A stretch of DNA of 64,000 nucleotides from Guillardia theta CCMP2712 (taxonomy: Eukaryota > Protista > Cryptophyta), in the NCBI RefSeq assembly GCF_000315625.1, contig NW_005434639.1:1-64000 (forward strand). The letters are read 5' to 3'. Each line of letters begins with the position of its first letter. The first letter of the stretch is position 1. Under the pieces are notes generated by a model. It did no database searches and was not told the origin of the DNA. It saw only the letters and a list, made by a program, of their open reading frames with translations. A program made the translations under genes and the position numbers. Positions 1 to 54,350 of the stretch are shown piece by piece.

Positions 1-202
1 CCTGCCTCAGATAAAGGGATCCTGCCTCAGATAAAGGGATCCTGCCTCAGATAAAGGGATCCTGCCTCAGATAAAGGGATCCTGCCTCAGATAAAGGGAT
101 CCTGCCTCAGATAAAGGGATCCTGCCTCAGATAAAGGGATCCTGCCTCAGATAAAGGGATCCTGCCTCAGATAAAGGGATCCTGCCTCAGATAAAGGGAT
201 CC
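1..202. repeat. Perfect 20-bp tandem array (CCTGCCTCAGATAAAGGGAT) x10, running off the window start
   Basis: Ten identical units read directly; same unit recurs at 14626-14879; no spacers. Confidence 0.98.
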
Positions 203-222
203 ACTAAACCCTAAACCCTAAA
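202..222 (-). repeat. Short telomeric tract (one CACTAAA variant + 2 CCCTAAA; TTTAGGG on -)
   Basis: cactaaa-ccctaaa-ccctaaa between the 20-mer array and the truncated collagen-like ORF. Confidence 0.9.
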
Positions 223-950
223 TTTTTACCCAACAAAGTTGTTCCATTAGAATTATAAAATTTGAGCTCTCCAGCATTTATTCCATTTGTTCCATTGTCT
301 CCTTTAGGTCCTGCCGCTGGTAAATTTATAGATGCTGATGAAACATTAGCATCTCCTATTTTTCCTAACAATTCTGTACCATCAACATTATAGAATTTTA
401 ATTCTCCTGCGTTTGTTCCTCTTGGAACATTTATAGAAGCTGTAGAAACATTAGAATCACCTATTTTAGCAAGTTCAATGGTTCCATCATAGTTTTTGAA
501 AATTATTTGACCCGCATTTTTTCCATTTGTTCCATTAGTTCCATTAGTTCCACTGTCTCCTTTATCTCCCTTTGGTCCTTGACTTCCAGTGCTTCCAGTA
601 TCTCCTTTATCCCCTTTATCACCTTTGATACCATCGGGTAGTGTTATATCTTGACTATTATAATTATTTAAAGTTATTGTCACATTTCCTGTTCTTGTAT
701 TCTTAAAATTTAGCTGAAATGTTTCAATTGTAGAAATATATCTTTGTTGTGCTTCATCATAATATATTTTAAATATTCCCTGTCTATCTGCTGAATCAAA
801 CAAATCTTTAATGTCTGTCTTAGCCGGCTCATTGTTGATGGTTAAGCTTCGTCTTATATTGTTATTTGTTGAAAGGCTTTGTTGTGTGCTCACTGTTTGA
901 TTATTTACAGTAATAAAAGAACCACCATATAAAATATTATCACATATCAA
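204..950 (-). CDS. Collagen-like (G-X-Y) fibre/tail-type protein, C-terminally truncated by telomere repeats
   Basis: GDKGDKGDTGSTGSQGPKGDKGDSGTNGTNGTNG plus three NAG(E/Q)xxFxNxxGTxxLxKIGD repeats; the third breaks off into telomere-encoded NLGFRV. Confidence 0.75.
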   Translation of the reverse strand: MICDNILYGGSFITVNNQTVSTQQSLSTNNNIRRSLTINNEPAKTDIKDLFDSADRQGIFKIYYDEAQQRYISTIETFQLNFKNTRTGNVTITLNNYNSQDITLPDGIKGDKGDKGDTGSTGSQGPKGDKGDSGTNGTNGTNGKNAGQIIFKNYDGTIELAKIGDSNVSTASINVPRGTNAGELKFYNVDGTELLGKIGDANVSSASINLPAAGPKGDNGTNGINAGELKFYNSNGTTLLGKNLGFRV

Positions 951-2637
951 ATGGTCTAAGTGAAGCCCTCCAGTTATCTTCGTTTTTTACATTGTCAACA
1001 TCTCCATTGTTTATTTTAGAAGCCTTCATCCTCAGATCCGTACACCAGTTTGTAGCATTCATTACAATATTACATATCCCCCTATTAGCTGAGTATCTGC
1101 CATCTTTTAGGATGTAGTTTCTAATGTTATAATTATAAATTACAATTGGATGTAATTGATACCAATTCGCCGTCGGTGGCGTGATATCCATAGCCACCAA
1201 AACACCATTCAGATACACCTTAAATATATCTTTGGATATGCTGAAAGCGTAATGATTCCAATCGTAAAACAATGTTTTATCATTCGCAAAATTATTGTTA
1301 ATGATAACAGACCTCAAATTCTCAACCCTTTGATGTAAATTATTAATATATACAATCTTGACCCGCAGCCCCAAAAATTTATCAGGCAAGGAATCATCAT
1401 CTGAAATAATCCAGTAAAATTCAGTCCCATCATAAAAACCATCGTTGCCATTCTTATTTTCATATTTGATTTGAAAAAGCCTATATTCTTGTGTTCCGTT
1501 GTTTCTTGCCTCGTTCGTGTTGTCAAATCTCCACCAAAAAGAAAGGTTTATGTACTGAGAAAATAAAAGGTCATTTACTATTAAATTTTTATTGCTCTGA
1601 AAATTAAGTCTGTACGTTGATATGTTAAGTTTATACGTATCTTCAACAGTTCCTGTAAATTCAATGTTGTTATAAGATGTATTCAATAGGTTCTTTATTG
1701 ATAAACTTGTAGGACCAATAAAAACATCTCCTTTGACTGGTGACAATGAAAGAGGATATGTTATATTGAAATTATTGTTATTCAAAGCTAACTTATCCGA
1801 GAACGTTAAAGAATTATTGACTGTTAAATTATTTGTATTCACTGAGTTTTTTATTTCATTGTTGATAACATTATATAATATATTAGACTCAGAATATATG
1901 CGATTGTTTAATAGGTTTGAATCAGTTTTTAAATGATTGTATAATATATTTGATTCATTAAGTGTATGCTCATATAATATGTTTGATTCATTAAGTGTAT
2001 GCTCATATAATATGTTTGATTCAGTATATATATAATTGTATAATATGTTTGATTCAGTATATATATAATTGTATAATATGTTTGAAGTATTATTTACTTC
2101 TTGTTTTGTGTATGCGTCGATTATATTTGGAAGGTCTGTAAGCTGAGTATATGAGCTCACTAAGTCCGGAAGGTCTGTAAGCTGAGTGTATGAGCTCACC
2201 AAGTCCGGAAGGTCTGTAAGTCGAGTGTATGAGGTCACTAAATCCGGAAGGTCTGTAAGCTGAGTATAGGAGCTTACTAAATCCGGAAGGTCTGTAAGCT
2301 GCGTGTATGAAGTCACTAAATCAGGTAAATTTATTAATGTTTCATAGTCGATATTTTGTAATTTTACATCTATTTCTGATTTATCATAATAGTTATCTAG
2401 CTCAGCGCTTAGTTCTGTTGTATCTATAAATTTATCATCTGTTTCTTGTTTTGTATATACTGAAAAATCTATCTCTCCTTTATTGTAATAATTCAAAAGC
2501 TCATTATCAACATAAGCTATTATCTCTGCCTTTTGGGCACCTATCTTAGCACCTAAATCATTAGATGTATTTAATAACTCTTGCTGTGATAATTGATAAC
2601 CACGACCAGCAACCCAATTTAAATTATCATAGCTCAT
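940..2637 (-). CDS. Repeat-rich viral fibre/structural-type protein with C-terminal ConA/LamG-like lectin domain
   Basis: 565-aa ORF; 13-aa (TDLPDLVSSYTQL) and 11-aa (ESNILYNYIYT) repeats; ISFWWR...WNHYAFS...KVYLNG-type LamG pattern. Confidence 0.65.
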   Translation of the reverse strand: MSYDNLNWVAGRGYQLSQQELLNTSNDLGAKIGAQKAEIIAYVDNELLNYYNKGEIDFSVYTKQETDDKFIDTTELSAELDNYYDKSEIDVKLQNIDYETLINLPDLVTSYTQLTDLPDLVSSYTQLTDLPDLVTSYTRLTDLPDLVSSYTQLTDLPDLVSSYTQLTDLPNIIDAYTKQEVNNTSNILYNYIYTESNILYNYIYTESNILYEHTLNESNILYEHTLNESNILYNHLKTDSNLLNNRIYSESNILYNVINNEIKNSVNTNNLTVNNSLTFSDKLALNNNNFNITYPLSLSPVKGDVFIGPTSLSIKNLLNTSYNNIEFTGTVEDTYKLNISTYRLNFQSNKNLIVNDLLFSQYINLSFWWRFDNTNEARNNGTQEYRLFQIKYENKNGNDGFYDGTEFYWIISDDDSLPDKFLGLRVKIVYINNLHQRVENLRSVIINNNFANDKTLFYDWNHYAFSISKDIFKVYLNGVLVAMDITPPTANWYQLHPIVIYNYNIRNYILKDGRYSANRGICNIVMNATNWCTDLRMKASKINNGDVDNVKNEDNWRASLRPFDM

Positions 2638-2643
2638 ATTTTA

Positions 2644-2904
2644 TTAATCACTCATATTTAATTTTTTAAGCTCCTCTCTGGCCTTCCTATTGAATTCTTC
2701 CCAAAAATTATTACATTTTATATTATCTTCCATAGTAAAATAAAGCGTGGTCTTTTCATTTGTTATATTAAATTCTTTTGATATCTCAGCATTTTGTTTA
2801 ATTATCTTATTTCTATAATATTCTCTCGACATCTGCTTTTTTTTCTCTATATATATTGGGTCTATTCTGTATTTATTAAAGTTCATTTTATTAAAACAGA
2901 GCAA
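2644..2904 (-). CDS. Small basic hypothetical viral-type protein
   Basis: 86-aa ORF exactly filling the gap between two larger ORFs of the cassette. Confidence 0.45.
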   Translation of the reverse strand: MLCFNKMNFNKYRIDPIYIEKKKQMSREYYRNKIIKQNAEISKEFNITNEKTTLYFTMEDNIKCNNFWEEFNRKAREELKKLNMSD

Positions 2905-2909
2905 AATAA

Positions 2910-3680
2910 ATGAGCAACCCGAGAGGCAGCAAAAACGGAGAGGTCGTTTTTAATTCTAAAAATGACGAAGGCATGTTATGGGATGAGTTCAAAATAAAAT
3001 ATAATGAATACTTAAACACTAGCGCCTTCTATATTATAAGAACCCCTAAAACAATAAATGGAAAAGGTAACCTTATAAAACTTGGTATATCTTCCGTTGG
3101 TTCTTCTGAAATCATAAGGAGGTTATCAGACTATGAAAAATATTATGATGGAGACTTTAGGGTATTACATCTTAGGGTTTGGTATCAGTATGTAAAAGGA
3201 ACAAATCAGGAGGGAGCGCCTCAGGAACGTTTCGAGTTGAAAACTAAGCGAAGGATGAAAGAACTAACATCATCAGCTTATGGTAATGAATGGTATAAGT
3301 CAAATGACTTAAAAACTCTACGCGATGTATTGAAAGAGTTTGATAAAGAAAATGAAGATATAAATTATGTACCACCAGAACGCAATAAGTCGCGTAAGGC
3401 AAAGCAAATATCAACCGATACCCTAGTAAGGGTTAAATATGGAAACAAATATTTTAATGGTGTTATATATAATATATCTGTGAAGGATAATAAACCGTGG
3501 TTTAGTGTTATATTTTTCAAAGACTATAAAATTAATAATAATGATTTAGGAGGATATGACAAGGAAGAGATAAGAGAGGCTATAACCAAATATGAAGATT
3601 GGGAAGAAAAAAACAAAGAACTTTCAAAAAAGCTCAAATCTGAATGGTCTAGGTTTAAAAATAAGGAAGGTATCCATTAA
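2910..3680 (+). CDS. GIY-YIG superfamily (T5orf172/MUG113-like) nuclease with possible C-terminal Tudor-like domain
   Basis: FYIIR...LIKLGIS...RRL..Y...E...GNEWY motif order; C-terminal VRVKYGNKYFNGVI...FSVIFFKDY. Confidence 0.6.
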   Translation: MSNPRGSKNGEVVFNSKNDEGMLWDEFKIKYNEYLNTSAFYIIRTPKTINGKGNLIKLGISSVGSSEIIRRLSDYEKYYDGDFRVLHLRVWYQYVKGTNQEGAPQERFELKTKRRMKELTSSAYGNEWYKSNDLKTLRDVLKEFDKENEDINYVPPERNKSRKAKQISTDTLVRVKYGNKYFNGVIYNISVKDNKPWFSVIFFKDYKINNNDLGGYDKEEIREAITKYEDWEEKNKELSKKLKSEWSRFKNKEGIH

Positions 3681-3760
3681 GTCGGGTCTTATGACATAAT
3701 ATGAAATTTTATCTTCTTCTAAAAGTAAATATACCATTTAATATATTTTGAGATATTAAA

Positions 3761-4132
3761 ATGTCTGAACCTAGAGATAAAGAATTATATGAAAAGATTA
3801 AAAAGAAAATAACAGACAAATATAAGCCCTCAGCATATAGGAGTGGTCTTATTGTAAAAGAATATAAAAGAGAGTATTTTAAGAAACATAAGAATAATAA
3901 TTCTTACACAGGTGATAAGAAAAAAAGTAACCTTAAAAGATGGTTTAATGAGAAATGGAGGAATCAGAGAGGAGAGGTAGGATATGATAAGAAAGGTGAC
4001 ATATACCGACCGACAAAAAGAATTAACAGTAAGACCCCTATAACAATAAAAGAGCTTTCACCCTCACAAATAAAGAGGGCTCAAGAAGTAAAGAAGGCCA
4101 CAGGAAGAGTTAAGAATTTTTCTAAGTTATGA
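3761..4132 (+). CDS. Small basic protein of a large-DNA-virus family (DUF5872-like)
   Basis: P.DKELYEKIK...PSAYRSGLIVKEYK...LKRWFNEKW...YRPTKRINSKTPIT.EL; family recalled from memory, not searched. Confidence 0.6.
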   Translation: MSEPRDKELYEKIKKKITDKYKPSAYRSGLIVKEYKREYFKKHKNNNSYTGDKKKSNLKRWFNEKWRNQRGEVGYDKKGDIYRPTKRINSKTPITIKELSPSQIKRAQEVKKATGRVKNFSKL

Positions 4133-4159
4133 GTGCGTGCCCGCCTCAGGAGATGGCCA

Positions 4160-4243
4160 TTTTTCGTTTTTTTCTTGCGGGAATCGAACCCGCGCGCTTA
4201 TCGCCGTAACGATGGCATATTGGCCACTCGACTATTAGGTCTT
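4160..4243 (-). ncRNA. tRNA-derived/Pol III-type element (A box + B box with T-arm), no intact cloverleaf
   Basis: Minus strand TAGTCGAGTGG (A box) ... GCGGGTTCGATTCCCGC (T-arm/B box); TATATA ~25-30 nt upstream; A-rich run downstream. Confidence 0.6.
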
Positions 4244-4648
4244 TTAGGGGGTAGGGGTGGTAGTCCTATATAAAATAAATTCTCATGCGTATTTTTGGGA
4301 GGGTACGCATAAGATACACACAGAGACAATGCGAAAAAATTTTTCGCATGAGAATGATAAGAAAATATTTTATTTTTCTTGAATTTCACACATCACATGT
4401 GAAAAAACACAAAACTTCACACTGAAAATCACAAAAAACAAAAAAATTTCAATCAAAACACATCAAGACCATAAGCCCAACGGAGTGACAGAGAGCCCCA
4501 TCATTCATTCCCCTTCCCCCCCCAGTCGCCCACCTCTTCCCTCCATGACCCTGAGCTGCGCCTGTCTCCTTGGTGCTAGGCTTGTTTTCCTTCCCTGCCT
4601 GTGCTCCATAGGTGGCTTGCCCATGAGCCGCGCCTGCCCCCCATCGGA

Positions 4649-6709
4649 CTAGGTCGACTCGCTTCCCCTTCTTGCCGTCCATAGCATGTGTTGCACCTCC
4701 AGCAGTTGCTTGATTGCTGCTGTCTTGATGCCTTCCCATTCCGTGTCTTCCACCCTTAGCACCCTGAAATTCTCATGCCATTCCCTTTCCATGATCGATC
4801 CTTTCACTCCTGCTATGAATGTTGCTTGTTCAACTTCATGGTCAGGTAGCAAAACTGTGATTTCTGCTCGTAGGGGGGCATATTTCTCTTCCTTTTCCTG
4901 AAATTTCTTCTTCAGGCATTCCAGGCTTGTTTGTTCGACTCCGTCATATTCCAATGTCCTTGCAAATTCGATGAGGACAATGCGTTTGATGCTTGCAAAG
5001 TAGCAGCAACCGTCAGGTATCCAGTGCCCTTCTCGGTGCATTGAAGTCCCCATCGCTTCCATCACGATGCGTATTGGAGTGTCCCACCATGAATTGACCT
5101 GTACCCTTTGTTTCCTCCAACTCTGCTGCAGTCTTACCTTGATCTTCTTCGTGACTTCATTGTGTGCTTTTTGAATCATATCTTGAAACTGCTTGCACGC
5201 TAGCTGAACATGACCCCAGGTTTCTTCTCGGTCTGGACAGTGAGGACAACATGGTGAGTTAGTCTTCCCCCATTGAAAGAGCTTCTTCCTCGTCGGTGCT
5301 GAGAAGGTGATCGCTTGGATAGCTGTTCGCGTAACTGACCCTTCGCATTGTTTGAACCCTCTCCCTAGTAAATCTCTTCCCACATGCATTTCGAGCATGA
5401 ATTTCTCTGTCAAGGTGAGGTCTCCCGCTCGAATCCTTGCCACCATTGTCTGTTGTCTGATAATGTAGTCCCATTTCTTCAAGCGATCGAATCCTGATGT
5501 AGGATTTTCTTCTCCTGCAATGATGAATTCCATTGGACTATCGTAGATTGCTTTCTCCCATCCCGAGGCAAATGTTTGTTTTGCTTGCTTGGCCATTTCC
5601 TTTGCCTCTTGAATGTTTCTATGAGATTCTTTTGCTAGTTGGAGTCGGATCCTGATTCCCCTCCCTTCGAGTTTCCTCATGCAAGTGAGTAACCGATCAT
5701 GTAAGTCCTCCAGCAGTTCGTCTTCGTATCGCATGGTATCCATTCGCAACGTATTTGTCATAAAGCGGTGGAAACGTGTGGACTGGTACATTATTGTGAC
5801 TTGATTTCCCCTTTTGATCTGTATTCCTTCCTCAAGGACATGTTGCAGAAGTAAACCGATTGCGATTGTGTTCGCTCGGATGATGCTGCACTTCCCATTG
5901 ATTTTCATCCCTCCTCCTGACGTCATCTCTTTTTGTTGGAGAACATATCCTACTCGCATGGATCTGTTTTTTCTGCCCTGCATGATGTCTCCTTCAATAG
6001 CTGCTGTGAAATGCCTTCCGCCTTGATGATCGCTGCACGGCTGGATCTGATCCCTTCGTCTGTTACACAGCTCCTCATACGTTGGGAGGATGTTGTCCTG
6101 AAGCTGGACTCGTAAGTATGTTGGGAGTGTGTGCCTAACTAGTATCCATAACTCCTCTGCAGTCTTCATCAAACACCTATTCCCTGTTTGCCAGAAGTTT
6201 GCTGCATAAGCTATTTGAGCGCCTTTCGGGACCCGGCTGATAATTTCAAAACCTTCTGGTATCTCATCAATGTTATTCTTCCATCCTATCAGAATGACAT
6301 GTATTGTATCCAGGATTTGTTCACGAAATCTCTCTTGTTTGTCCATCCAAACCACCACTCTGTGCAGTTCCCTTGCTCTCTTCTTGTCCAGAGCCTGGGG
6401 ATGTGTGTGTAGGGTAGGCCAGTTACGAAATGTACTGATGTCGCATGCTGTAATCTCTGCTAGATGTTGTAAAAACTCGTATGCCAATGGTTGTGTTGTT
6501 TCTTGGCGAACCTCTGATACTACCTCCTCGAGTTGTTGCCACCATGCTGTAGCTTCTGTTTCGCCGTCGTCCAATGCATTAACTATTTCCAGCAGCAGAT
6601 GGATGCTTTGATTGCAGTCTCTTCGGTTATTACCGTCCTCTTCCCTTGTTGCAGATGTGAAGGGAGCCGAGTCCAGTGACGCTTCCAACCATTCTATTGG
6701 TGGATCCAC
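4649..6709 (-). CDS. ORF2 C-terminal fragment: degenerate RNase H-like domain, CCHC zinc knuckle, restriction-like (PD-(D/E)xK) endonuclease
   Basis: CPHC...ETWGHVQLAC, KAHNEV, WIPDG...VLIEFAR, EKEEKY match the RLE-type non-LTR signature. Confidence 0.85.
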   Translation of the reverse strand: MDPPIEWLEASLDSAPFTSATREEDGNNRRDCNQSIHLLLEIVNALDDGETEATAWWQQLEEVVSEVRQETTQPLAYEFLQHLAEITACDISTFRNWPTLHTHPQALDKKRARELHRVVVWMDKQERFREQILDTIHVILIGWKNNIDEIPEGFEIISRVPKGAQIAYAANFWQTGNRCLMKTAEELWILVRHTLPTYLRVQLQDNILPTYEELCNRRRDQIQPCSDHQGGRHFTAAIEGDIMQGRKNRSMRVGYVLQQKEMTSGGGMKINGKCSIIRANTIAIGLLLQHVLEEGIQIKRGNQVTIMYQSTRFHRFMTNTLRMDTMRYEDELLEDLHDRLLTCMRKLEGRGIRIRLQLAKESHRNIQEAKEMAKQAKQTFASGWEKAIYDSPMEFIIAGEENPTSGFDRLKKWDYIIRQQTMVARIRAGDLTLTEKFMLEMHVGRDLLGRGFKQCEGSVTRTAIQAITFSAPTRKKLFQWGKTNSPCCPHCPDREETWGHVQLACKQFQDMIQKAHNEVTKKIKVRLQQSWRKQRVQVNSWWDTPIRIVMEAMGTSMHREGHWIPDGCCYFASIKRIVLIEFARTLEYDGVEQTSLECLKKKFQEKEEKYAPLRAEITVLLPDHEVEQATFIAGVKGSIMEREWHENFRVLRVEDTEWEGIKTAAIKQLLEVQHMLWTARRGSEST

Positions 6710-6747
6710 GGTCTTGCTTTCTTCAATTTGAGATCGCTCAAAGATGG

Positions 6748-9366
6748 CTATGTTCCCTTGAACTTTGAAAGGTAATTGCTTGTAGTGTAACAGAATCTTT
6801 CTTGCTGATTCCCTCCTTCATCATAACAGGTGGGGTCATGTTGGAGCCACCGCCTCAAAATTACCCGGGTACAAGCCTTCGTATTCGTTTCCTCTCTCCC
6901 TTGGTCCGGTCTGGCTAGTTTCTTGTGTGGCTGAAGTTCATGTGGGCTAGCCTCCCTTTTTCCTTTCCTTCTCTTGTTTAGAGGCTTCCCCTCCTCCCTG
7001 GCTGGCCTTCTTCTCTTCCCTGTTCCTGCCTGCTCAAGTCCGAGTTTTGCCCAGATGACATTCGCTTGCAGATATTGTGCAAGGATTTCTTCTGCTTGTT
7101 CCCTTTGCTTTGGGAATGGCCAGAGTCGGATGGGCAGGTGCAGGGAGATGCCCTCGGTATCTGGGACGGGTAAGACACTTGTCATGGAGTGGAAGCCTAC
7201 TTGGGGCAGTAGTCTCCATGCCTTTGCAAAACTCTCCCAGCCTTGCCGAGCAGGAGATGTAGGTAGGGAGTTTTCTCCGGACAGCAGGGAGTTTTCTTCT
7301 GAGATCATCTTGTCCTCCAGGTCATGTAAGATGGCTATTGTCCCCGGTTTCATCTTGCTTTCAATCATTTCCCAACTGATGGTGGTCTGCATTTTTTCCG
7401 CTATCCAGATTGCGAGTCTCCCCGGTCCTCTTATCTCTTCGATCTCGTTGAGTCTGCCCGATCTGATTTCTCGTTGTAGCTGGTTTATTGTTTGACACCC
7501 CCATTGGTTGCACCATGATGTTAGTTTGTGGATCAGACTGCTTTTGATATCATCATCCACCCTGCATTTCTTATTCGTTTCTTTCTCTAGATACCGAATC
7601 GCCGCCCTTCCCAAGATGGGTGCTGGATGGGGGAGTTGGAGGCCTCCTTTGTCCCAAGGTAGGTGAAAGATAGCGTTGCTTGTACTCTTGCTCAATCCCA
7701 TAGCTCTTTTGAATGCTCTGGTCCAGAGGGTATCTAAGGTTTGTAAGTCTGACCAAGACCAGCTCACCAGTACCGCCGAGTATCTAAATATATTGACGAT
7801 GCCTACCTTCACCAGGTAATATTTTTGGGCTGCCGAGTAAGCAGATGATTCAATCAGCTTTGTCAGTTCTTTTGTCTTCTCCAAGATGTGTTCTTTCTCT
7901 CCCCACGTGAAGGGGCAGGTGTGCGCCTTGTTGCCTCTTCCTCCTGGTCTCCACAAGCTGATCCGGATCCCTAGATATTTGAACCATTTTGTCGGTGGTA
8001 GGTTCACAAACTCCTTGTCGAAGAACTTGATGGTCTGTGTTCCTGGGATCTCCCTTCTTAGCCGATAATCAAAGCTGGTGATTTCAGATTTCTTCGTGTT
8101 CAGTTCTAATCCACTCCATCGACAGAATCGCTCTACCACTTGGACAAGCGTTTTCATCTCTCTCACTGAATGTGCTATCAGGACAAGGTCGTCTGCAAAT
8201 GACAGATTATTAGGGTGTTGAGTTGCAATCTCGTCTTGTTTTTGATCGAGCTGTTTGGACAAGATGCTTAGCAGAAGATTTGTTTTTGGCGGACTTGCGG
8301 GGCTGCCTTGGGGTAATCCTCTGAGAAGTGGGATGGCTGCTGTTTCGAACCTCTCTGTCTGAATTTGCAGCGCTATCCCTTGGCTACAACTGATTGCGAC
8401 GTCTACATCACACTGGTGAAAGCCATATACTTCCATGATTTTTGCAATGGATTCGACTGCCACATTGTTAAAGAAGTTTGCAAAGTCGAGGTACAGCAGG
8501 ATGAGGTCGTGTTGATTACTCTGAGCCTCCTCGATGATGTTGAGTAGACGATGACCCTGCCTGATCGTTCCTCCCTCTGGTCTGAAACCTTCCTGGTTGT
8601 TAGTGAGTAGCTTATGTTTTTCAGCAGCTTTTGCCAGTCTGTGCGCTATGACTGCCTGGAAGATCCTCGTTATCGAGGAGAGGACGCATATAGGTCTTTG
8701 ATTCTCCAAGACGTGACATATCTCATTTTTTGGGAGGAGCCTAACTCTCGCGAGCATCTTTAGTGTTTGCTTGTCTCCGATCAAGGCTCGGCTGATTGTC
8801 TTGCCTATTTCCTCCTTTGCACTGTCAGGCAGAGCTTTCAGAATCTCGTTTGAAATCAAATCCATGCCTGCTGCTTTCCGGTTGGCCAGTTTTTGAATCC
8901 ATACTTGGATCTCGCCTGGCTCCAGCGGGTAAGCTATCTCTACATCCCTGGTCGGGTGTTGATTGATTTGCTCTGGGGGTTCGAAGTCCGGTGGTTTGAC
9001 GGAAGTCAGTGATTGACAGCTTTTGCAGAAGAAGAGGATTGATGCTTCTTCGTTTTTCTGGCTTTTGTCATATAACGGAATCAGTCGTCCTTTTGTTTGA
9101 CATTCAGCTCTTGCACAGGTTCCGTTCATGGTACATCCGTTGACTGCAAAGAAGGTTGCCGTGTGGGTTTCATCTTCTAGATCTCTTGCCAATCTCATGG
9201 GGAGGAATTGCTCGATGTTTTTGTATCCTTCCAGGCGCCACCCTCCTGGCTGTGTGATCAGTCCTCGGATGATGGGTACGATTGCGTGTGCAGGCGCCAG
9301 CGTTATGAACAGCTTTTGTGTCAGTGTTGCCAGGTTCCTCGCCCCGAGAACCTCGACGTGCAGCAT
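6748..9366 (-). CDS. ORF2 fragment: non-LTR reverse transcriptase
   Basis: KAAGMD, RPICVL, QEGFR, YLDFANFF, GLPQGSPASP, FADDLVL, GLELNTKKS, KYLG, GGLQL. Confidence 0.95.
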   Translation of the reverse strand: MLHVEVLGARNLATLTQKLFITLAPAHAIVPIIRGLITQPGGWRLEGYKNIEQFLPMRLARDLEDETHTATFFAVNGCTMNGTCARAECQTKGRLIPLYDKSQKNEEASILFFCKSCQSLTSVKPPDFEPPEQINQHPTRDVEIAYPLEPGEIQVWIQKLANRKAAGMDLISNEILKALPDSAKEEIGKTISRALIGDKQTLKMLARVRLLPKNEICHVLENQRPICVLSSITRIFQAVIAHRLAKAAEKHKLLTNNQEGFRPEGGTIRQGHRLLNIIEEAQSNQHDLILLYLDFANFFNNVAVESIAKIMEVYGFHQCDVDVAISCSQGIALQIQTERFETAAIPLLRGLPQGSPASPPKTNLLLSILSKQLDQKQDEIATQHPNNLSFADDLVLIAHSVREMKTLVQVVERFCRWSGLELNTKKSEITSFDYRLRREIPGTQTIKFFDKEFVNLPPTKWFKYLGIRISLWRPGGRGNKAHTCPFTWGEKEHILEKTKELTKLIESSAYSAAQKYYLVKVGIVNIFRYSAVLVSWSWSDLQTLDTLWTRAFKRAMGLSKSTSNAIFHLPWDKGGLQLPHPAPILGRAAIRYLEKETNKKCRVDDDIKSSLIHKLTSWCNQWGCQTINQLQREIRSGRLNEIEEIRGPGRLAIWIAEKMQTTISWEMIESKMKPGTIAILHDLEDKMISEENSLLSGENSLPTSPARQGWESFAKAWRLLPQVGFHSMTSVLPVPDTEGISLHLPIRLWPFPKQREQAEEILAQYLQANVIWAKLGLEQAGTGKRRRPAREEGKPLNKRRKGKREASPHELQPHKKLARPDQGREETNTKACTRVILRRWLQHDPTCYDEGGNQQERFCYTTSNYLSKFKGT

Positions 9367-10260
9367 GGTTTGATGTCTTGCACTCCAAAAAGTTTTGCTT
9401 GATTCTTTGGAGTTGCTCTGGAGGAATGTCTCGATTAACGGGTTCAGTTCTTGAAGATATGCTGTCTCCGGCTGTTGCAGCGCTGGCTGGAGATCTCTCC
9501 ATGACGTTGTTTGGGTGGCACTTCTCTGGCAGTTGACTCAGCATTGGGGCTTTGGGCTTAAAGTCTGACTTCTTGCCCATTGCATTTTGAGACTCTTTAC
9601 TCCCTATCGTGCCCAAGCGTCTTCTTCGTTCTTCGCATATTTTCAGGAATATCTCTTGGTCTTGTGCTGCGCAGATCTCCTTGAATTTGGTCATATTCTC
9701 TCTTATTTCTGCATGTAAGCTCGACTCCTTGTGTGCGCGATCAATAAAGTCTGGAATTTCTGAAGCGTTTCTTAAGTCCTTGTGAAGTTGCTTGATTTTG
9801 CGCTTCAGATCCATTTGAATTTTGGATGCATGTCTTTTCCCGCTGGAGCCTCGTAGCGGAATTTCCTTGATGGGGAGGGCTGTTGTTATCAATTCGAGAA
9901 TGTCGCAATCTTGATGTAGAGCTTGTGCCGCTTTTATCTTCTCATCAAGTGCTATTGCCCATTCCACGCCTAGTCTTCCCGATAGCTTGTCCATCTCGAC
10001 CACCCTTTTCTTTCGTCGAGGGGTTGCTTCTCGATCCCTCCTTTGCGGGAGGATTTCAATCTTTGGGATGGCTTGCTTACCCTCAGCATCGAGAGATCTC
10101 ACATTCACTACAAGTGCTCTGTGGTCGACTGCGGCTCCTATGATGCAATCCTCTGCGGTCTGCGATATTAAGCTTACTGTGCGAGATGGATGGTGTAATG
10201 CAAAGACATGATCCAGTTTTGCTTGGTGATGACCCTGCTTGTACCATGTGGAGAGTGCTG
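9170..10260 (-). CDS. ORF2 fragment: end of APE domain plus APE-RT linker
   Basis: This frame reads STWYKQGHHQAKLDHVF...VDHRALVV upstream of the annotated 10108 start, i.e. the C-terminal APE motifs. Confidence 0.75.
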
Positions 10261-11492
10261 CTTCTGCTCATCTTCTCGCAAGTGACCATCTGGGATCGTC
10301 CAAGTTCGTTTAAGCCTTGTTCCATTCTCTCATCTGCACGGTGCACACTCGATTTGCTCCCGTATCCGACTCTCATGAGGATCTCTGGATGTTGTCGAGA
10401 TGCATTGAAGTCGCCTCCTATGATGGTGAGCTTGACACTTGGCTCCGTCTTGAGCATCTGGCTCAGCGTTGCCCACATCTCGTCTTGATCCTCCCCTTGC
10501 GCTGCAGTAGGAAAGTGGGTGTTACAGATCCCTATCGGTTCTTTTTTTCCGATCTGTAAAAGTTGTATTCTTTTTTGGAGATTCTGCTCTTCCAACATGT
10601 CAGCGCGGCGGCAGAGCAGGGGGGAGGGACGAGGGAGAAGGTCCGCATGTACTAGCGTCACAAGGCGAAGATCACTCTTACCCTTTCTCCCCTCCCCTGC
10701 ACCTTTCGTCATGAACACTCGGTAGCATCCCCATTCTTTCTTGATCATCATTCGGAGATCTGCCTCCTTTCGTTTTCCCCCGACCAAAACTTCTTGAAGT
10801 AGCACGACTGTTGGTTGATATGTTTCAATCAGGTATCCTAGGATGTGTTTCAGCACAAATTGACTGCATCCATTGACATTGTGAGAAATGATGTTGCCAG
10901 GGGCGTTGTCCTTCCTGTGCGTTTCCACCCATGCTGATTGCACTGACCTGTCGGTGGTGGTCGTGGGTGGTTTGCTGCCTGCTGGTAGGATTTGCTCCTC
11001 CGCCCCCGTTGCCCATTGAAGGTGAGACGAGTTCCCATCTTGCATCTTTGTTGGGCCTGGTAGCTCCTCCTCTCCCCTTGTCTCCTTGTCGTTCTTCGAG
11101 ATTGGCGCTGTGTGCATTGCTTGTGGCGGAGGAGGTGGCTGGAGTGGAGAGACGGGGCATGAAGCAGGAGGTGGGGGAGGGGAGGACGTCAGGATGTCTA
11201 CCTGTGCTGACCTGTCTTGTAGTTGCAGGACCGTCGCGGCTATGAGCTTCGTTGATCCTTGTCCTCCTTGCTCCTGCTCGTCTTCCAATCTCTCCTGTAG
11301 CCGTGCATCTTCAGATGCCTGGGTCGCCTGTAGATCGCCTGCGCGTTCTTGGCCGTCTTCTCGCCTTTCCATCCGGTTAGGTATACGTTCCATGGTGAGC
11401 TCTGCAGCTTGCCATTCCTTGTAACCTGTATCTTGCGCGTGCTGTGCATTGGGTTGTTTCTCGCATGTGCACATGTTGTGCACATGTTCCAT
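10083..11492 (-). CDS. ORF2 fragment: apurinic/apyrimidinic-like endonuclease (APE)
   Basis: IISHNVNG, VVLLQEV, ICNTHFP, IIGGDFNA motifs. Confidence 0.9.
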   Translation of the reverse strand: MEHVHNMCTCEKQPNAQHAQDTGYKEWQAAELTMERIPNRMERREDGQERAGDLQATQASEDARLQERLEDEQEQGGQGSTKLIAATVLQLQDRSAQVDILTSSPPPPPASCPVSPLQPPPPPQAMHTAPISKNDKETRGEEELPGPTKMQDGNSSHLQWATGAEEQILPAGSKPPTTTTDRSVQSAWVETHRKDNAPGNIISHNVNGCSQFVLKHILGYLIETYQPTVVLLQEVLVGGKRKEADLRMMIKKEWGCYRVFMTKGAGEGRKGKSDLRLVTLVHADLLPRPSPLLCRRADMLEEQNLQKRIQLLQIGKKEPIGICNTHFPTAAQGEDQDEMWATLSQMLKTEPSVKLTIIGGDFNASRQHPEILMRVGYGSKSSVHRADERMEQGLNELGRSQMVTCEKMSRSSTLHMVQAGSSPSKTGSCLCITPSISHSKLNIADRRGLHHRSRSRPQSTCSECEISRC

Positions 11493-12405
11493 ACCCCCCC
11501 CCCAGAGCCCATCCAGCAGCAGATGTCTTGCTGATGGGGGGGGACGCCTTGTTGCCTCCCTGTGTTGAAGATATCTTGTTGAAGATATCTTGTTGTTGTG
11601 TTTTCCTTCGTGTCTTTGCGATCAGCAGGAAAATTCCACAATTGTAGCCGTCTGTTTGTTGCAGCCCAGTTGACACACATGCCCTCCATGTCGTGTCGTC
11701 ACAGTGTTCTTGTTGATCGCTAATTGCCTCGGTGATAATCGTCGCCATGAGTGTTGCTAGGTCCATTCGTTGTGCGCCCCCCAATTGAAACTGTGCCTCC
11801 CTTTGGCTTCTGACTGTCCCTAGGTCTCTCTCAAGGGCCGTGCTAAGCGAGTCGACGATGTGTATTCTTTTTGTGTCAACATCTGCCACGATTAGGATCC
11901 AATGATTGCCGTTCTCTACGCAAGGGAATAAGAATGGTTGAGCTGCCCCGGCTAGCAGTCGTTTTGCTCTCCGTGTCCTTCCCTCCTGATCTCTCAAACC
12001 CGCTACTATTCTCGGGAGAACAATGGTCCCTCTCTGCAGCCCAAATTGGTTTCTAGTTTGCTCGCTGGCATACCTCGTGCCTTGGAGCCATGCTATTTGA
12101 AATCTGTCTTCCGCTGGTTCTAAATTTCGGTTTACCTCAACGATTAATGCCTCCATAACGTCCTCAGAGAGAAATCCATCTTCTCCTGAGTTGAGCAGCG
12201 CCGCTGCTCCGTACTCTCTATTGTTTTCCCGTAGACTCCAGGGGATCTCCCCTATCAAGTCGAATGTTTGTATTTTTCTGTTTTTTTCTGTTTTTTTCTT
12301 GTCATTGTTTTTCTCACCTTCTTGTCTCTTTCTGCTTGATTCCACCACGCCCTGGTGCCCACTGTCCCACCTGCCCTCAACTCCTCCTCCTCCTCCTGCT
12401 TCCAT
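11377..12405 (-). CDS. ORF2 N-terminal fragment: Ulp1/SENP-like (C48) cysteine protease
   Basis: FLSEDVM...PCVENGNHWILIV...IHIVDSL...QQTDGYNCGIFLL: His-Asp-Gln-Cys order of the C48 family. Confidence 0.85.
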   Translation of the reverse strand: MEAGGGGGVEGRWDSGHQGVVESSRKRQEGEKNNDKKKTEKNRKIQTFDLIGEIPWSLRENNREYGAAALLNSGEDGFLSEDVMEALIVEVNRNLEPAEDRFQIAWLQGTRYASEQTRNQFGLQRGTIVLPRIVAGLRDQEGRTRRAKRLLAGAAQPFLFPCVENGNHWILIVADVDTKRIHIVDSLSTALERDLGTVRSQREAQFQLGGAQRMDLATLMATIITEAISDQQEHCDDTTWRACVSTGLQQTDGYNCGIFLLIAKTRRKTQQQDIFNKISSTQGGNKASPPISKTSAAGWALGGGYGTCAQHVHMRETTQCTARARYRLQGMASCRAHHGTYT

Positions 12406-14552
12406 TAGGCTTGCGCTGCTGGGAAGGAGTCAAGCGACATCTCTTCCGATTCTGCCGCCATGCTCCCAGCCTCGGGTACATCTTCCATTCGAGCGTCTTT
12501 CATCTGTAGCTCACTGCTCAAAACAAATTTCAATTCGTTTCTATCTCCCAGCATTCCTACGAGGGAGAGCGCCGTTTCCTCCAGGAATTTATTCAAAGCA
12601 ATGAAGAGAAGGTCAGTTTTCAAGGGCTTCTCCTCATTTGGTGCGAAAGCGCTGCTCTTGCGTTTCGCTACCTTCCACGTATGCTTGCCTGCAATCATCC
12701 TGACTCGTTCGCGCAGTTGCTTGCTCACGGCATTCTCTGCCGCGTTGGCACCCTTATCAGCCCACTCTTGTAGCGTGGGGAAGGATGCATTTCCTGGGCT
12801 CTCCGGAGCCATCTCTTGCACCGCGTCATCAAGATGGAGTTGAAGCTGCCCTTGCTGTTGCAGCTCGCTCCTAGTTACGTCAGCAATAGTTTCCTTAAGT
12901 TCTTCGACGACCACGTCCGTTCCCGCATCTGGGAGGTTGGTCTCGTTGATAATTGAACTGAGCTCGATCTCTTTCCACACAGTTCCCTCTGCTCTGGTCC
13001 CCGTCGTTTGTGACCTGGCCTCAGGGTTAGACTGATCGCGAGTTGCCTGAGGCGACACTTGGAGGTTCAGACTGCTCGCTGTCGTTTGGATTTCAACTGT
13101 GCCTTGCCAGCAGAGGAGCTGTGTGGGGAATTCAGCCATCATCTTTCTTGCACTACTTTCACTGCGTAGCCGGAGAATGATACCAGACCCATCCCAGATC
13201 CCTGTTTCTGGATCGCATTGGAGGTGGATCCGTTGGAGATCTTTTTCCACCTGTGGATCAAAGCAAGCGACAGCCCTCCGAATGTTTCGGATGACTTTTG
13301 CTCTGCCCGTTTCGTCACTTGCACAGATTTTTTCGATCTCATTTCGGGAGAACTTCCCTGACGGCACAGGAGAGGAGATTTGTACCGAGTACAGCATCTC
13401 TGCTCCCGTTGCCATTGCCGTGCCCTCTTGTCGCACCGCATTCTTCATATTCTTGTGCAGCGCCGTTGCTTCCATCTGCACTGAGAACCATTTCAGTATT
13501 TTGTCATTCTCTGAGACCAGTCCCAAAGTGACTCCTGCACGATCCTTTCCATGTCGATCGAATGCTTGAAGAACGATGTCCGCTGCTTCAAGGCTCGAGC
13601 ACGTTGCGATCCAGTCGACCTCTCTGTTCTGGTTGACTATTTCTATTCCTACCGCAGCGAACACCTTCTTTGGCGGTAGGTTCCTCTTGGGGGGGAGGTT
13701 CACTGTCATTCCCGCGTTTGGGATCAGATCAATAATCGCTAATCCCTGCTTCAGGCATAGCTGCCTGTAGATCTCACATATGTCACCTGTGCTCGAATCG
13801 TTGAGCATCAGGAGTTGGGCCACCTCAGCTAGGATTCCAACTCTGCTCATGTTCTCCTTCTTTGGCCGCATCTTGAACGAGATCGGTGGGTTGGCTGCTG
13901 GGTTCACTGCTAGAATCCTCCTGCCTGCCACCTTGAAGGTACCATCTCCTTTCCAGAGTTTCTCAGCCGCCTCATTGCGGACAAATGTGATCACTGCTGG
14001 GATCTCCGCTGCCTGCACAAGGTCAGGCTTCAAGGGAGCCTTGAAGATCAGGCTCCTGCTGTCTTGCGTCTGATCGACGATCAAGCCTTGCTCTTCAAGC
14101 TTGAGGCATAAGTTTTCCACCTGTCTGGAAAAGTATGCAGGGATCCCAAGTACCTTCATGGTAATCGTCTGCACATTGGTGCCCTGATCATCATATGATC
14201 TGGCCTCCATCTGCCTTTGTCTGTCAGCTTGGAACTCTGACAGGTACCACTGCTTGACATCGTCACCCCACTGCCTGAGCCCTTTCGGATTCTCCAGTGA
14301 CGAGGGTTCAGCGAAGCTGCATGTCTGACTGATGGCTTCGGCTAAGGCTTCCAAGGAAATTTCTTTTGCTTTCAGAGCTTTGCTCGTCCTGCTTTTGGGG
14401 TTCTGCCTTGCGAATTCATCCAGTCTCCGCATCAGTTCGGCTGATGACGGCATCGTTGCAGCTTCCGTCTGCCTCTTGAGGTAGCTGGAGGTACGGTACT
14501 GCACGATCTCGTCAGGGTTCACAATAGATATTGGCCACATGTTTCGAAGCAT
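12405..14552 (-). CDS. Retroelement ORF1 (715 aa) with RRM-like region
   Basis: Intact ORF upstream of ORF2; MKVLGIP...AVITFVRNEAAEKL...VAGRRILAV fits an RRM pattern; paralog at 17392-18462. Confidence 0.8.
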   Translation of the reverse strand: MLRNMWPISIVNPDEIVQYRTSSYLKRQTEAATMPSSAELMRRLDEFARQNPKSRTSKALKAKEISLEALAEAISQTCSFAEPSSLENPKGLRQWGDDVKQWYLSEFQADRQRQMEARSYDDQGTNVQTITMKVLGIPAYFSRQVENLCLKLEEQGLIVDQTQDSRSLIFKAPLKPDLVQAAEIPAVITFVRNEAAEKLWKGDGTFKVAGRRILAVNPAANPPISFKMRPKKENMSRVGILAEVAQLLMLNDSSTGDICEIYRQLCLKQGLAIIDLIPNAGMTVNLPPKRNLPPKKVFAAVGIEIVNQNREVDWIATCSSLEAADIVLQAFDRHGKDRAGVTLGLVSENDKILKWFSVQMEATALHKNMKNAVRQEGTAMATGAEMLYSVQISSPVPSGKFSRNEIEKICASDETGRAKVIRNIRRAVACFDPQVEKDLQRIHLQCDPETGIWDGSGIILRLRSESSARKMMAEFPTQLLCWQGTVEIQTTASSLNLQVSPQATRDQSNPEARSQTTGTRAEGTVWKEIELSSIINETNLPDAGTDVVVEELKETIADVTRSELQQQGQLQLHLDDAVQEMAPESPGNASFPTLQEWADKGANAAENAVSKQLRERVRMIAGKHTWKVAKRKSSAFAPNEEKPLKTDLLFIALNKFLEETALSLVGMLGDRNELKFVLSSELQMKDARMEDVPEAGSMAAESEEMSLDSFPAAQA

Positions 14553-14625
14553 TCTCGATGGTTTCCCGAGCTTCCTGCGTTCCTGGCGACTCTTGCTCTA
14601 CCACGCAGGGACCCCGCTGATCTGC

Positions 14626-14785
14626 ATGCCTCAGATAAAGGGATCCTGCCTCAGATAAAGGGATCCTGCCTCAGATAAAGGGATCCTCTCAGATAAAGGG
14701 ATCCTGCCTCAGATAAAGGGATCCTGCCTCAGATAAAGGGATCCTGCCTCAGATAAAGGGATCCTGCCTCAGATAAAGGGATCCT
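14626..14785. repeat. 20-bp tandem array (~8 units, one 18-bp variant) abutting the 5' end of unit A
   Basis: Same unit as 1-200; variant cctctcagataaagggat at 14685-14702. Confidence 0.97.
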
Positions 14786-14825
14786 CCTAAACCCTAAACC
14801 CTAAACCCTAAACCCTTAAACCTTA
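14786..14825 (-). repeat. Telomeric tract inside the 20-mer array
   Basis: (CCCTAAA)n with cccttaaa/ccttaa variants. Confidence 0.95.
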
Positions 14826-14879
14826 ATCCTGCCTCAGATAAAGGGATCCTGCCTCAGATAAAGGGATCCTGCCTCAGAT
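14826..14879. repeat. Second block of the 20-bp repeat (~2.7 units)
   Basis: Read directly, between two telomeric tracts. Confidence 0.95.
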
Positions 14880-14947
14880 CCCTAAACCCTAAACCCTAAA
14901 CCCTAAACCCTAAACCCTAAACCCTAAACCCTAAACCCTAAACCCTA
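14880..14947 (-). repeat. Interstitial telomeric tract (CCCTAAA) x~9.5
   Basis: Perfect heptamers, followed on + by (ATT)n to ~14963. Confidence 0.97.
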
Positions 14948-15125
14948 TTATTATTATTATTATGTGAGTTTATTAGAATGCTAGAATGTTGCTCGGCCTC
15001 GTTGTGGGCTTATGCAATTTGATCCTAGTCTAAAGAGGCGCTCGAGCACTGGGAGTACACGGCCTACAATGCGAACCCTGCTTCTGAGGCGTCTTTCTAC
15101 TTTCTACTTCTGCTGTCTTCTCTTG

Positions 15126-15298
15126 GCTTCCTCAGCCTCAGTCAGGAGAGTTGCCTCTCCTCACCTTGGCCTTCGGTCACCACCTACTCTACCTCCATTC
15201 AGCTTCCTCAGCCTCAGTCAGAAGAGTTGCCTCTCCTCACCTTGGCCTTCGGTCGCCACCTACTCCTCCTCCATTCAGCTTCCTCAGCCTCAGTCAGG
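15126..15298. repeat. 76-bp tandem repeat, ~2.3 copies
   Basis: gcttcctcagcctcagtcag... starts at 15126, 15202 and 15278. Confidence 0.9.
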
Positions 15299-15629
15299 TA
15301 CGGGCTCGCCCCGTCTTCTTCCTCGCCCTCGCCTTGCTCTTCCTCCATGTCTTCCTCTTCTTCGCCATCTTCCCTCATCTCCACCCGCAGTCGGTCCTTC
15401 TTGTCCACCCATAGCGTTGCCTTTCTCAATTGACCTTGGAGCTCTAAAACGTTTCGCGGTGAGGGTGGTAGATTCAAATCCACGCATACCACGCCTCATG
15501 TGGGGGCGGGGTGGGTCTTCCGACCGTGTTCCGAATTCAAATCACGAAGAGCCAAGCAGAACTTTTTCAGGGGTAGGGTCTTCTTGAGTACAATTTCTTG
15601 GTACCAGTTAGTACAGTCCGAACCATGTG

Positions 15630-16518
15630 ACTTTAATAACTTCCTCTATGACAGAAGGAATAAGAAGTACTTGCTTGTGGACTTTGGGCTGGCAGAGAAA
15701 CAAATGCAGTCATCAGGCCGCAGCATCGGCAACATCTTGCCCTGTGAGGTTTCTACGGCCAGCTCTCGCTCCTCGCGGAATCAAAAGGAGCAGGAGAAGC
15801 TAGAGATGGCGCAGCAGATGGCGAAGAGGCGGATCATGTTGGGCGTCAGCAAGACGAACGCATCGGTGACAGTGAGGAACTCAGGGGTCAAATTCGAACG
15901 TCCAGTCAAACGCGCGGGAACTCGGGGATACCGAGCGCCCGAAGTGCTCATGGGCATGCAGTGCCAGACCACAGCAGTGGACGTGTGGGCTGCTGGGGTA
16001 GTACTGCTTACCCTGCTGTGCCGCACGACACAGTTCCAATGGTTCCAGTATAACGACATAGTCACGGCAACGATGGAGATCTACGGGTACGCTCTTTGTG
16101 TACCTTGGAAGTGCGCTTGTCTGACTGTCTGAGCAGCTTGCGCATGTACATCAAGAGCATGGATGCTGTGTGGAAGCTCCTCGACGTTAAGGTAAAATTG
16201 TTGTCGTCGGCGTTGTTGTATCAAGAGGATGACGATGAGGTGATATGGGTTGGCCGCGAGGCCTGAGGTTGCTAACTTGATGTCATTCAGATTCCACCAT
16301 TGGAACTGCATCTCAGCTATGCCCGCGGTTTCAAGCAAACATGGCGGACCTTGTCAAGCTCCCTGGGCGCGCATGCGGGATGCAAGGACTGGCTGGAGGT
16401 GGATGAGAAACATGGGATCTGGGACTTCCTCAACTGCTGCCTCAACATCGATCCCCGCACGAGGATTACAGCACTGGAGGCTCTGAAGCATCCCTTCCTC
16501 ATTAGTGCTGTCAAGTAA
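15630..16518 (+). pseudogene. CDC7: 5'-truncated Cdc7-like Ser/Thr kinase (C-lobe only), two introns retained
   Basis: NNFLY...YLLVDFGLAE, long insert, RAGTRGYRAPEVL, QTTAVDVWAAG, RITALEALKHPF; no Gly-loop, VAIK or HRD upstream. Confidence 0.75.
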
Positions 16519-18462: not shown

Positions 18463-18508
18463 ACCTCTTGCTTGCAGCTTCCTTGGCGCCCTGGCGGCTT
18501 CCCCTACA

Positions 18509-18550
18509 CCTGACGAGGAGCCATGCTGCCTGACGAGGAGCCATGCTGCC
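18509..18550. repeat. Different 20-bp tandem repeat (CCTGACGAGGAGCCATGCTG) x2 at the 5' end of unit B
   Basis: Two exact copies between the ORF1 leader and the telomeric tract. Confidence 0.93.
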
Positions 18551-18647
18551 CCTAAACCCTAAACCCTAAACCCTAAACCCGAAACCCGAAACCCTAAACC
18601 CGAAACCCGAAACCCGAAATCCTAAACCCGAAACTCTAAACCCGAAA
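18550..18647 (-). repeat. Telomeric tract degenerating proximally (CCCTAAA to CCCGAAA/TCCTAAA/CTCTAAA)
   Basis: ~14 heptamers: perfect distally, variant proximally. Confidence 0.95.

Positions 18648-39852: not shown

Positions 39853-40908
<1,056 letters not shown>

Positions 40909-50636: not shown

Positions 50637-54350
<3,714 letters not shown>

What the first reader, a model, noticed from the sequence alone, without database searches (positions are those of the whole stretch)
1..222. The outermost sequence is a perfect 20-mer array, not the canonical telomere repeat
Only three heptamers separate the broken viral ORF from at least ten identical 20-mers that run off the window. The homogeneity implies recent synthesis or homogenisation. 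Either another copy of element A starts beyond position 1, or the 20-mer itself caps this end as an alternative telomere-like repeat (inference).
Basis: partly seen in the sequence, partly recalled or inferred. Interest (0 to 1): 0.8.

Follow-up and report, generated by a model that had tools for sequence, protein, structure and literature searches.

The report
Retrotransposon head repeat beside telomere
The perfect 20-base repeat at the edge of the window is the variable tandem "head" of a telomere-targeting jumping gene (a LINE retrotransposon) of the cryptophyte alga Guillardia, not a new kind of telomere; the array itself is ordinary, though the element family seems little described.

Summary
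In detail: window 1-202 holds 10.1 identical copies of a 20-mer, followed by 2.7 CCCTAAA heptamers and then AT-rich virus-like DNA. The "alternative telomere" reading is not supported. In this window and in seven related loci (five from the Guillardia theta CCMP2712 reference, the rest metagenomic), 16 arrays of 18-26-nt units were found. All sit at the 5' end of a LINE body or its remnant, and 15 directly abut a telomere tract on their centromere side. Intact relatives carry this 5'-terminal sequence once; other copies repeat it 2 to 17 times with periods of 18, 19, 20, 21, 23 or 26 nt. The elements insert into TTTAGGG repeats in one phase and one orientation (sense strand = G strand). The array at 1-202 is therefore most likely the head of a second copy of "element A", whose body lies beyond position 1. 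The three heptamers are what is left of a telomere that healed a broken end inside a captured virus-like fragment. This is a new member of a known kind (telomere-repeat-specific LINEs with 5' variable tandem repeats). How the ~20-nt reiteration arises is inferred, not shown.

The parts
1..202 (-). 5'-terminal tandem array (10.1 x 20 nt, all identical) of a second copy of LINE 'A'. The body is expected beyond position 1.
   Evidence: same polarity and junction type as the arrays
203..222 (-). Remnant telomere tract (2.7 heptamers; G strand on minus). It is the target of the copy-2 insertion and the cap of the virus-like block.
223..4545 (.). AT-rich foreign, virus-like block (31% GC in 223-4133; 4134-4545 is unassigned at 42% GC). 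It is joined on one side to a 3'-truncated LINE and capped on the other by telomere repeats.
223..950 (-). Collagen-like ORF of the block, cut off at its 3' end by the block's boundary (one truncation).
   Evidence: Collagen, E 2e-6
940..2637 (-). 565-aa orphan ORF with an internal 39-bp (13-aa) tandem repeat.
2910..3680 (+). 256-aa orphan ORF.
3761..4132 (+). DUF5872 ORF; 55% identical to a protein on a giant-virus MAG contig in IMG/VR.
   Evidence: (E 9e-34)
4177..4194 (-). tRNA-like T-arm fragment; no complete tRNA was called.
4546..14624 (-). LINE 'A' copy 1, body. It lacks about 350 nt of 3' UTR and the (TAA)n tail that relatives have.
12405..14552 (-). ORF1 of copy 1 (715 aa), uninterrupted.
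4649..12405 (-). ORF2 of copy 1 (Ulp1-like protease, APE-like endonuclease, RT, long C-terminal part). It is broken: 5 frame switches and 1 in-frame stop relative to the intact 2575-aa ORF2 of L008.
14625..14784 (-). 5' array of copy 1: eight units (seven of 20 nt, one of 18 nt).
14785..14827 (-). Degenerate telomere tract (about 6 heptamers) between two array pieces.
14828..14879 (-). Array fragment (a 5'-truncated unit plus two units) flanked by telomere repeats on both sides; read as an older copy that was broken and healed.
14880..14947 (-). Telomere tract, 9.7 perfect heptamers.
14946..18508 (-). LINE 'B' remnant (3.6 kb, internally deleted). Its (TAA)n tail is at 14946-14963, and its 356-aa ORF is an ORF1 homologue.
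18509..18550 (-). 5' array of B: a different 20-mer x 2.1, made from sequence that is single-copy in other B copies.
18550..18647 (-). Innermost telomere-like tract (CCCTAAA/CCCGAAA, 14 units); ordinary host DNA follows.

Best explanation
The array is the 5'-terminal variable tandem repeat of a telomere-repeat-specific non-LTR retrotransposon (LINE) of Guillardia. Shown: these LINEs (ORF1 about 715 aa; ORF2 2575 aa with a Ulp1-like protease, an APE-like endonuclease and RT) sit in TTTAGGG tracts. Their sense strand is always the G strand, their 5' end faces the centromere, and a (TAA)n-type tail joins the repeat in one fixed phase. Their first 18-26 nt occur once in intact relatives and 2 to 17 times in other copies. 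Inferred history of this end: a LINE A copy was broken in its 3' UTR, and a fragment of virus-like DNA was joined to the break. Telomerase then healed the free end of that fragment at 222/223. A new A copy inserted into the young telomere, leaving 2.7 heptamers on its proximal side. Its head is the array at 1-202 and its body lies off-window. Inferred origin of the array: reiteration of whatever sequence forms the element's 5' terminus, coupled to 5'-end formation during insertion and/or followed by rapid slippage or unequal exchange. That would keep the units identical. A role as repeated internal promoter units is possible but untested.
For: The unit and its context recur. The window has arrays at 14625-14784 and 1-202. 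The G. theta reference has the unit at L005:7216, L005:9884, L007:9848 and L006:9800. In all, 16 arrays of period 18-26 were found; 15 abut a G-strand telomere tract within 5 nt, and all precede an ORF1-bearing body or its remnant. Alignment A3 shows that the last unit is homologous to the single-copy 5' terminus of the intact L008 and L009 elements, where telomere repeats come directly before it. Copies with bodies 95-98% identical have periods of 20 or 26 nt starting at the same first base. In window B, a 5'-shortened copy has duplicated its new terminal 20 nt. All 12 LINE tails join the telomere repeat in the same phase. L008 and L009 are full-length with telomere repeats on both flanks. 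RT scores E 1.5e-28, and the endonuclease catalytic columns are conserved. Break-and-heal footprints occur at four or more other places. Copy 1 lacks the 3' UTR and tail.
Against: The body of the proposed second copy is not in the window. One array piece (14828-14879) is followed by telomere repeats rather than a body, so the same could be true beyond position 1. L001's array is separated from its telomere tract by 77 nt. The same B-tail/A-head neighbourhood occurs in L005, L006 and the window with different arrays. That could mean the arrays change in place rather than at insertion. The Pfam endonuclease hit is below threshold (E 2e-3). No transcription data are available. The viral nature of the block rests on one gene plus base composition.
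Confidence: 0.85

Rival explanations
1. Only an array fragment is present. The second copy was itself broken inside its head, and canonical telomere repeats (the true chromosome end) follow just beyond position 1.
For: This structure exists at 14828-14879: an array piece flanked by telomere repeats. LINE bodies cut at arbitrary points and capped by telomere repeats are common in the comparators.
Against: Only 1 or 2 of 16 arrays are of this kind, and the 10 units here are uninterrupted.
Confidence: 0.1
2. The 20-mer is an alternative telomere-like repeat that caps this chromosome end.
For: It is the outermost sequence in the window and is perfectly homogeneous.
Against: The same arrays lie internally on the centromere side of LINE bodies. 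The unit shows no G/C strand asymmetry. Unit length and sequence vary between copies and families. Canonical TTTAGGG tracts of up to 15-19 units exist at contig ends of relatives.
Confidence: 0.03
3. It is an artefact: an adapter concatemer, or an assembly chimera or collapse at a contig end.
For: Contig ends in repeats are error-prone. The copy number and the perfect identity could reflect consensus polishing. The virus-like block was not found in the reference gene set.
Against: The unit occurs in the same biological context in an independent Sanger-era assembly and at 14.6 kb in this window. The junction types match natural classes seen elsewhere.
Confidence: 0.02

Closest known systems
SART1 / TRAS1 of Bombyx mori (telomeric-repeat-specific LINEs, R1 clade)
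   Same: APE-type endonuclease plus RT. Insertion is into the telomere repeats, not at the very end, at a fixed position and in a fixed orientation. The sense strand is the G strand, as in SART1 (PMC7265360).
   Different: The tail here is (TAA)n-like, not poly(A). ORF2 is 2575 aa with an N-terminal Ulp1-like protease. No sequence-level match to the solved TRAS1 or R1 endonucleases was returned. The target is a heptamer, and the host is a cryptophyte alga with canonical telomere tracts still present.
MoTeR / FoTeR telomere-targeted retrotransposons of fungi
   Same: Non-LTR elements confined to telomere repeats that carry variable-number tandem repeats concentrated in their 5' region (PMC12857005).
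   Different: Those encode a restriction-like endonuclease, and their 5' end points to the chromosome terminus. Here the endonuclease is APE-like and the 5' end points to the centromere.
Tandem 5' 'monomers' of mouse L1 (own knowledge, not tested here)
   Same: A 5' tandem array of variable copy number that evolves in concert within a LINE family.
   Different: Mouse monomers are about ten times longer and are proven promoters. Here the units are 18-26 nt, start at the very first base of the element, and have no demonstrated promoter activity.
Other telomeric retroelements: Zepp (Chlorella), GilM/GilT (Giardia), HeT-A/TART (Drosophila), Athena (rotifers)
   Same: Head-to-tail accumulation of retroelements at chromosome ends, interleaved with or replacing telomere repeats (list in PMC10088271).
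   Different: That list contains no cryptophyte element. Per PMC7265360, the Drosophila elements add onto the chromosome end rather than insert within repeats.

Membership tests
Telomere-repeat-specific non-LTR retrotransposon (functional class) | Reverse transcriptase of LINE type | tested here: met
   RVT_1 scores E 1.5e-28 in the window and 7e-29 in L008. The best solved relatives are R2 and LINE-1 ORF2p.
Telomere-repeat-specific non-LTR retrotransposon (functional class) | Endonuclease domain | tested here: met
   Exo_endo_phos is below the Pfam cut-off (E 2e-3). Even so, the N..E..GDxN..D..H columns are invariant or nearly so in alignment A2. The A2 profile matches the L1 endonuclease, but that profile is dominated by distant LINEs.
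Telomere-repeat-specific non-LTR retrotransposon (functional class) | Telomere repeats on both flanks, with a fixed insertion phase and orientation | tested here: met
   L008 and L009 are flanked on both sides. All 12 tails join the repeat in one phase, and every element has its sense strand on the G strand relative to its adjoining tract.
SART/TRAS (R1 clade) | [quoted passage not shown] | tested here: not met
   Tails are (TAA)n, once (CTA)n and once TA-rich. No TRAS1 or R1 endonuclease chain was returned. No RT phylogeny was made.
MoTeR/FoTeR-like elements | Restriction-like endonuclease; 5' end towards the chromosome terminus | tested here: not met
   No such domain was found in the C-terminal 1099 aa; only a weak zf-RVT hit appeared. 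The orientation is the opposite. The shared trait is the 5' VNTR (PMC12857005).
Telomere or telomere-like capping repeat | Terminal position, distal to all unique DNA, at many ends | tested here: not met
   15 of 16 arrays lie on the proximal side of a LINE body, next to internal telomere tracts. The true end of this chromosome is not in the window.
Telomere or telomere-like capping repeat | G-rich/C-rich strand asymmetry and one conserved unit | tested here: not met
   GC skew is 0.000 over 1-200. Units differ in length (18-26 nt) and sequence between copies.
Telomere or telomere-like capping repeat | Synthesis by telomerase; binding by end-protection proteins | not testable with these tools
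   This needs biochemical or chromatin data.
Giant-virus-derived insert (Nucleocytoviricota) | Hallmark genes (capsid, polymerase, packaging ATPase and the like) | tested here: not met
   None was found among the four ORFs. Three ORFs have no viral relatives in IMG/VR.
Giant-virus-derived insert (Nucleocytoviricota) | Foreign base composition and at least one gene with giant-virus relatives | tested here: met
   GC is 31% against 52% in the host part. The DUF5872 ORF is 55% identical to a GVMAG contig protein, and three further viral contigs match.

The most novel reading that the evidence does not exclude
The arrays of about 20 nt are written by the element's own reverse transcriptase, which re-copies the last 18-26 nt of its RNA template each time it reaches the 5' end. 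This would be telomerase-like reiterative copying by a LINE enzyme, acting on whatever sequence happens to be terminal. The same chromosome ends would also record capture of virus DNA at a broken end, followed by telomerase healing, as a route for viral DNA into an algal genome.
Probability: 0.2. Interest if true: 0.65.

Novelty: new member of a known kind. Interest (0 to 1): 0.38.

Why it matters
It removes a tempting but wrong reading (a non-canonical telomere) and replaces it with a consistent picture of cryptophyte chromosome ends. Those ends are stacks of telomere-targeting LINEs separated by short telomere tracts. They are repeatedly broken, healed by telomerase and re-invaded. The held literature lists no telomere-specific retrotransposon from cryptophytes. 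The family also has an unusual ORF2 (protease, endonuclease and RT in 2575 aa). Reiteration anchored at the 5' terminus is a clean natural data set on how LINE 5' ends are formed. The virus-like fragment capped by a telomere is a small, datable example of foreign DNA capture at a chromosome end.

Tried and rejected
- **Exact-protein look-ups:** the DUF5872 ORF and a host MORN-repeat ORF found nothing. The window's own contig could not be located or extended.
- **Metagenome scans:** the 20-mer gave no hit, and a conserved ORF1-start 24-mer found only the contig already held.
- **IMG/VR scans:** three of the four ORFs of the AT-rich block gave no relatives.
- **Exhaustive protein search on the 565-aa ORF:** it returned 175 hits, but they match through a short 13-aa repeat. 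The best are unnamed metagenome proteins, and the best hit's contig has no annotated neighbours. It adds nothing to the virus assignment.
- **RNA searches:** ARAGORN and Rfam found no complete tRNA, only a T-arm-like 18-mer.
- **No other body copy:** a self-comparison of the window found no second copy of the element A body.
- **Rejected, adapter concatemer:** the unit appears in an independent assembly.
- **Rejected, subtelomeric satellite invaded by LINEs:** the unit is homologous to the single-copy 5' terminus of intact elements.
- **Rejected, 5'-truncated insertions piling up:** LINE truncation removes 5' ends and does not retain them.
- **Not attempted:** assigning the LINE to a clade by RT phylogeny.

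Full report
**1. Observation**

Window 1-202 is a tandem array of a 20-mer: 10.1 copies with no mismatch or indel. The unit occurs 19 times in the window against 0.01 expected by chance. The other nine copies lie at 14625-14867. Positions 204-222 are 2.7 CCCTAAA heptamers. With the C strand on the plus strand, this is the orientation expected at a left chromosome end. From 223 the GC content falls to 31%, against about 52% in the host part. A minus-strand collagen-like ORF is cut off at that boundary. Ten GGATCC sites lie in 1-222.

**2. Element A**

The region from about 4546 to 14624 carries minus-strand ORFs with matches to four domains:
- RT (RVT_1, E 1.5e-28);
- an Exo_endo_phos-type endonuclease (weak);
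- a Ulp1-like protease;
- zf-RVT (weak).

It is a non-LTR retrotransposon whose 5' end is the 20-mer array at 14625-14784. The closest proteins come from the cryptophytes Hanusia phi and Guillardia theta. Parts of the window are 98-99% identical to G. theta CCMP2712 scaffolds. The host is therefore G. theta or a very close relative. It is not human, and nothing was withheld on that ground. The rest of the window encodes ordinary eukaryotic domains such as ankyrin, MORN and ubiquitin/AWS.

**3. Comparators**

Nine loci were fetched through proteins returned by the searches. Two metagenome contigs, L008 and L009, hold full-length relatives with uninterrupted ORF1 (about 715 aa) and ORF2 (2575 aa). 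Both are flanked by TTTAGGG tracts on both sides. The ORF2 order is Ulp1-like protease, endonuclease, RT, then a long C-terminal part. The endonuclease hit is weak. However, alignment A2 keeps the catalytic pattern of the AP-endonuclease fold. No match to the solved TRAS1 or R1 endonucleases came back.

**4. Insertion rules**

- All 12 element tails ((TAA)n, once (CTA)n, once TA-rich) join the telomere repeat in the same phase.
- All 5' junctions follow a telomere tract that ends at nearly the same point of the heptamer.
- The sense strand is always the G strand of the adjoining tract, so the 5' end faces the centromere.

This is site-specific insertion into telomere repeats, as in SART1 of Bombyx (PMC7265360). 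The protein architecture and the tail are different.

**5. The arrays**

TRF found 16 arrays of period 18-26 nt in the window and seven loci. Fifteen abut a G-strand telomere tract; L001 has a 77-nt spacer. All precede an ORF1-bearing body or its remnant.
- In the A family, the 5'-terminal sequence occurs once in L008 and L009 and twice at two places in L005.
- It occurs four times in L007 (one unit of 18 nt), five times with period 26 in L006, and nine times with period 23 in L001.
- It occurs eight times at 14625-14784 and at least ten times at 1-202.

Alignment A3 shows that the last unit is homologous to the single-copy terminus of the intact elements. Other families have their own units, up to 17 identical copies (L003). 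In the window's element B, a copy that lacks the usual head has duplicated the 20 nt that became its new terminus. This is hard to explain by random slippage in a 3.6-kb element. I infer that reiteration is tied to formation of the 5' end. Later slippage or unequal exchange probably keeps the units identical. Bodies differ by 2-5% between loci, whereas arrays are uniform. The mechanism itself is not shown.

**6. History of this end (inferred)**

- Several LINE bodies in the comparators stop at arbitrary points and are capped by telomere repeats, followed by the next element (L003, L005, L006).
- The array fragment at 14828-14879 is flanked by telomere repeats on both sides. These are footprints of breakage or erosion, healing by telomerase and re-invasion.
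- Copy 1 of A has a whole ORF1. Its ORF2 has 5 frame switches and 1 in-frame stop (counts only). It lacks about 350 nt of 3' UTR and the tail.
- At that truncation it is joined to the AT-rich block 223-4545, whose far end is capped by the heptamers.
- The array at 1-202 then has exactly the junction of a new A insertion into that young telomere.

**7. The virus-like block**

Only the DUF5872 ORF has viral relatives: 55% identity on a giant-virus MAG contig. The other three ORFs are orphans. "Viral" is plausible, but it rests on one gene plus base composition.

**8. Comparison with the literature**

A 2023 list of telomeric retroelements names insect, Giardia, Chlorella, fungal, lizard and rotifer elements, and no cryptophyte (PMC10088271). 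Fungal MoTeR and FoTeR elements also carry 5' VNTRs, but they use a restriction-like endonuclease and have the opposite orientation (PMC12857005). Searches for G. theta subtelomeres or telomeric retrotransposons found nothing relevant.

**9. Verdict**

The "alternative telomere" reading is rejected, and "another copy of element A" is accepted with about 0.85 confidence for the nature of the array.

Noticed in passing
window 223-4545: A 4.3-kb AT-rich virus-like block sits between a 3'-truncated LINE and a de novo telomere junction. It looks like foreign DNA captured at a broken chromosome end. Only one ORF (DUF5872) has giant-virus relatives.
   Followed up: partly
window 4134-4545 (T-arm-like match at 4177-4194, minus strand): About 400 bp that could not be assigned, lying between the last viral-type ORF and the LINE breakpoint. 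It contains a tRNA-like fragment, but no full tRNA was called.
   Followed up: partly
L008:2873-10600 and L009:2443-10170; window 4649-12405: The ORF2 of this LINE family is 2575 aa, with a Ulp1-like cysteine protease ahead of an APE-like endonuclease and RT, then about 1100 aa with no recognised domain. In the paper consulted (PMC4640811), Ulp1-like domains are reported for LINEs with a restriction-like endonuclease.
   Followed up: partly
window 18550-18647; L001:6011-6218: The innermost telomere tracts are variant repeats: alternating CCCTAAA/CCCGAAA in the window, and a 16-nt compound unit in L001. Older, proximal telomere tracts appear to have diverged.
   Followed up: no
L005 (G. theta JH993036.1, 423-446 kb of a 458-kb scaffold): A cluster of telomere tracts and LINEs in both orientations, head to head, lies at least 13 kb inside a scaffold. 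It may be a relic of an end-to-end rearrangement or an inverted duplication.
   Followed up: no
window 2129-2322 and 1909-2085: There are 39-bp and 33/66-bp tandem repeats inside or next to the 565-aa orphan ORF. The 13-aa repeat is shared with many unnamed metagenomic proteins.
   Followed up: partly
window 15126-15297: A 76-bp tandem repeat (2.3 copies) lies in the 3' region of LINE B. The same region precedes A copies in L005 and L006, so the B-tail/A-head neighbourhood may be a duplicated subtelomeric segment.
   Followed up: partly
window 40675-40894 and 53316-53454: The host part contains long simple repeats: a pentamer of 44 copies and hexamer arrays.
   Followed up: no
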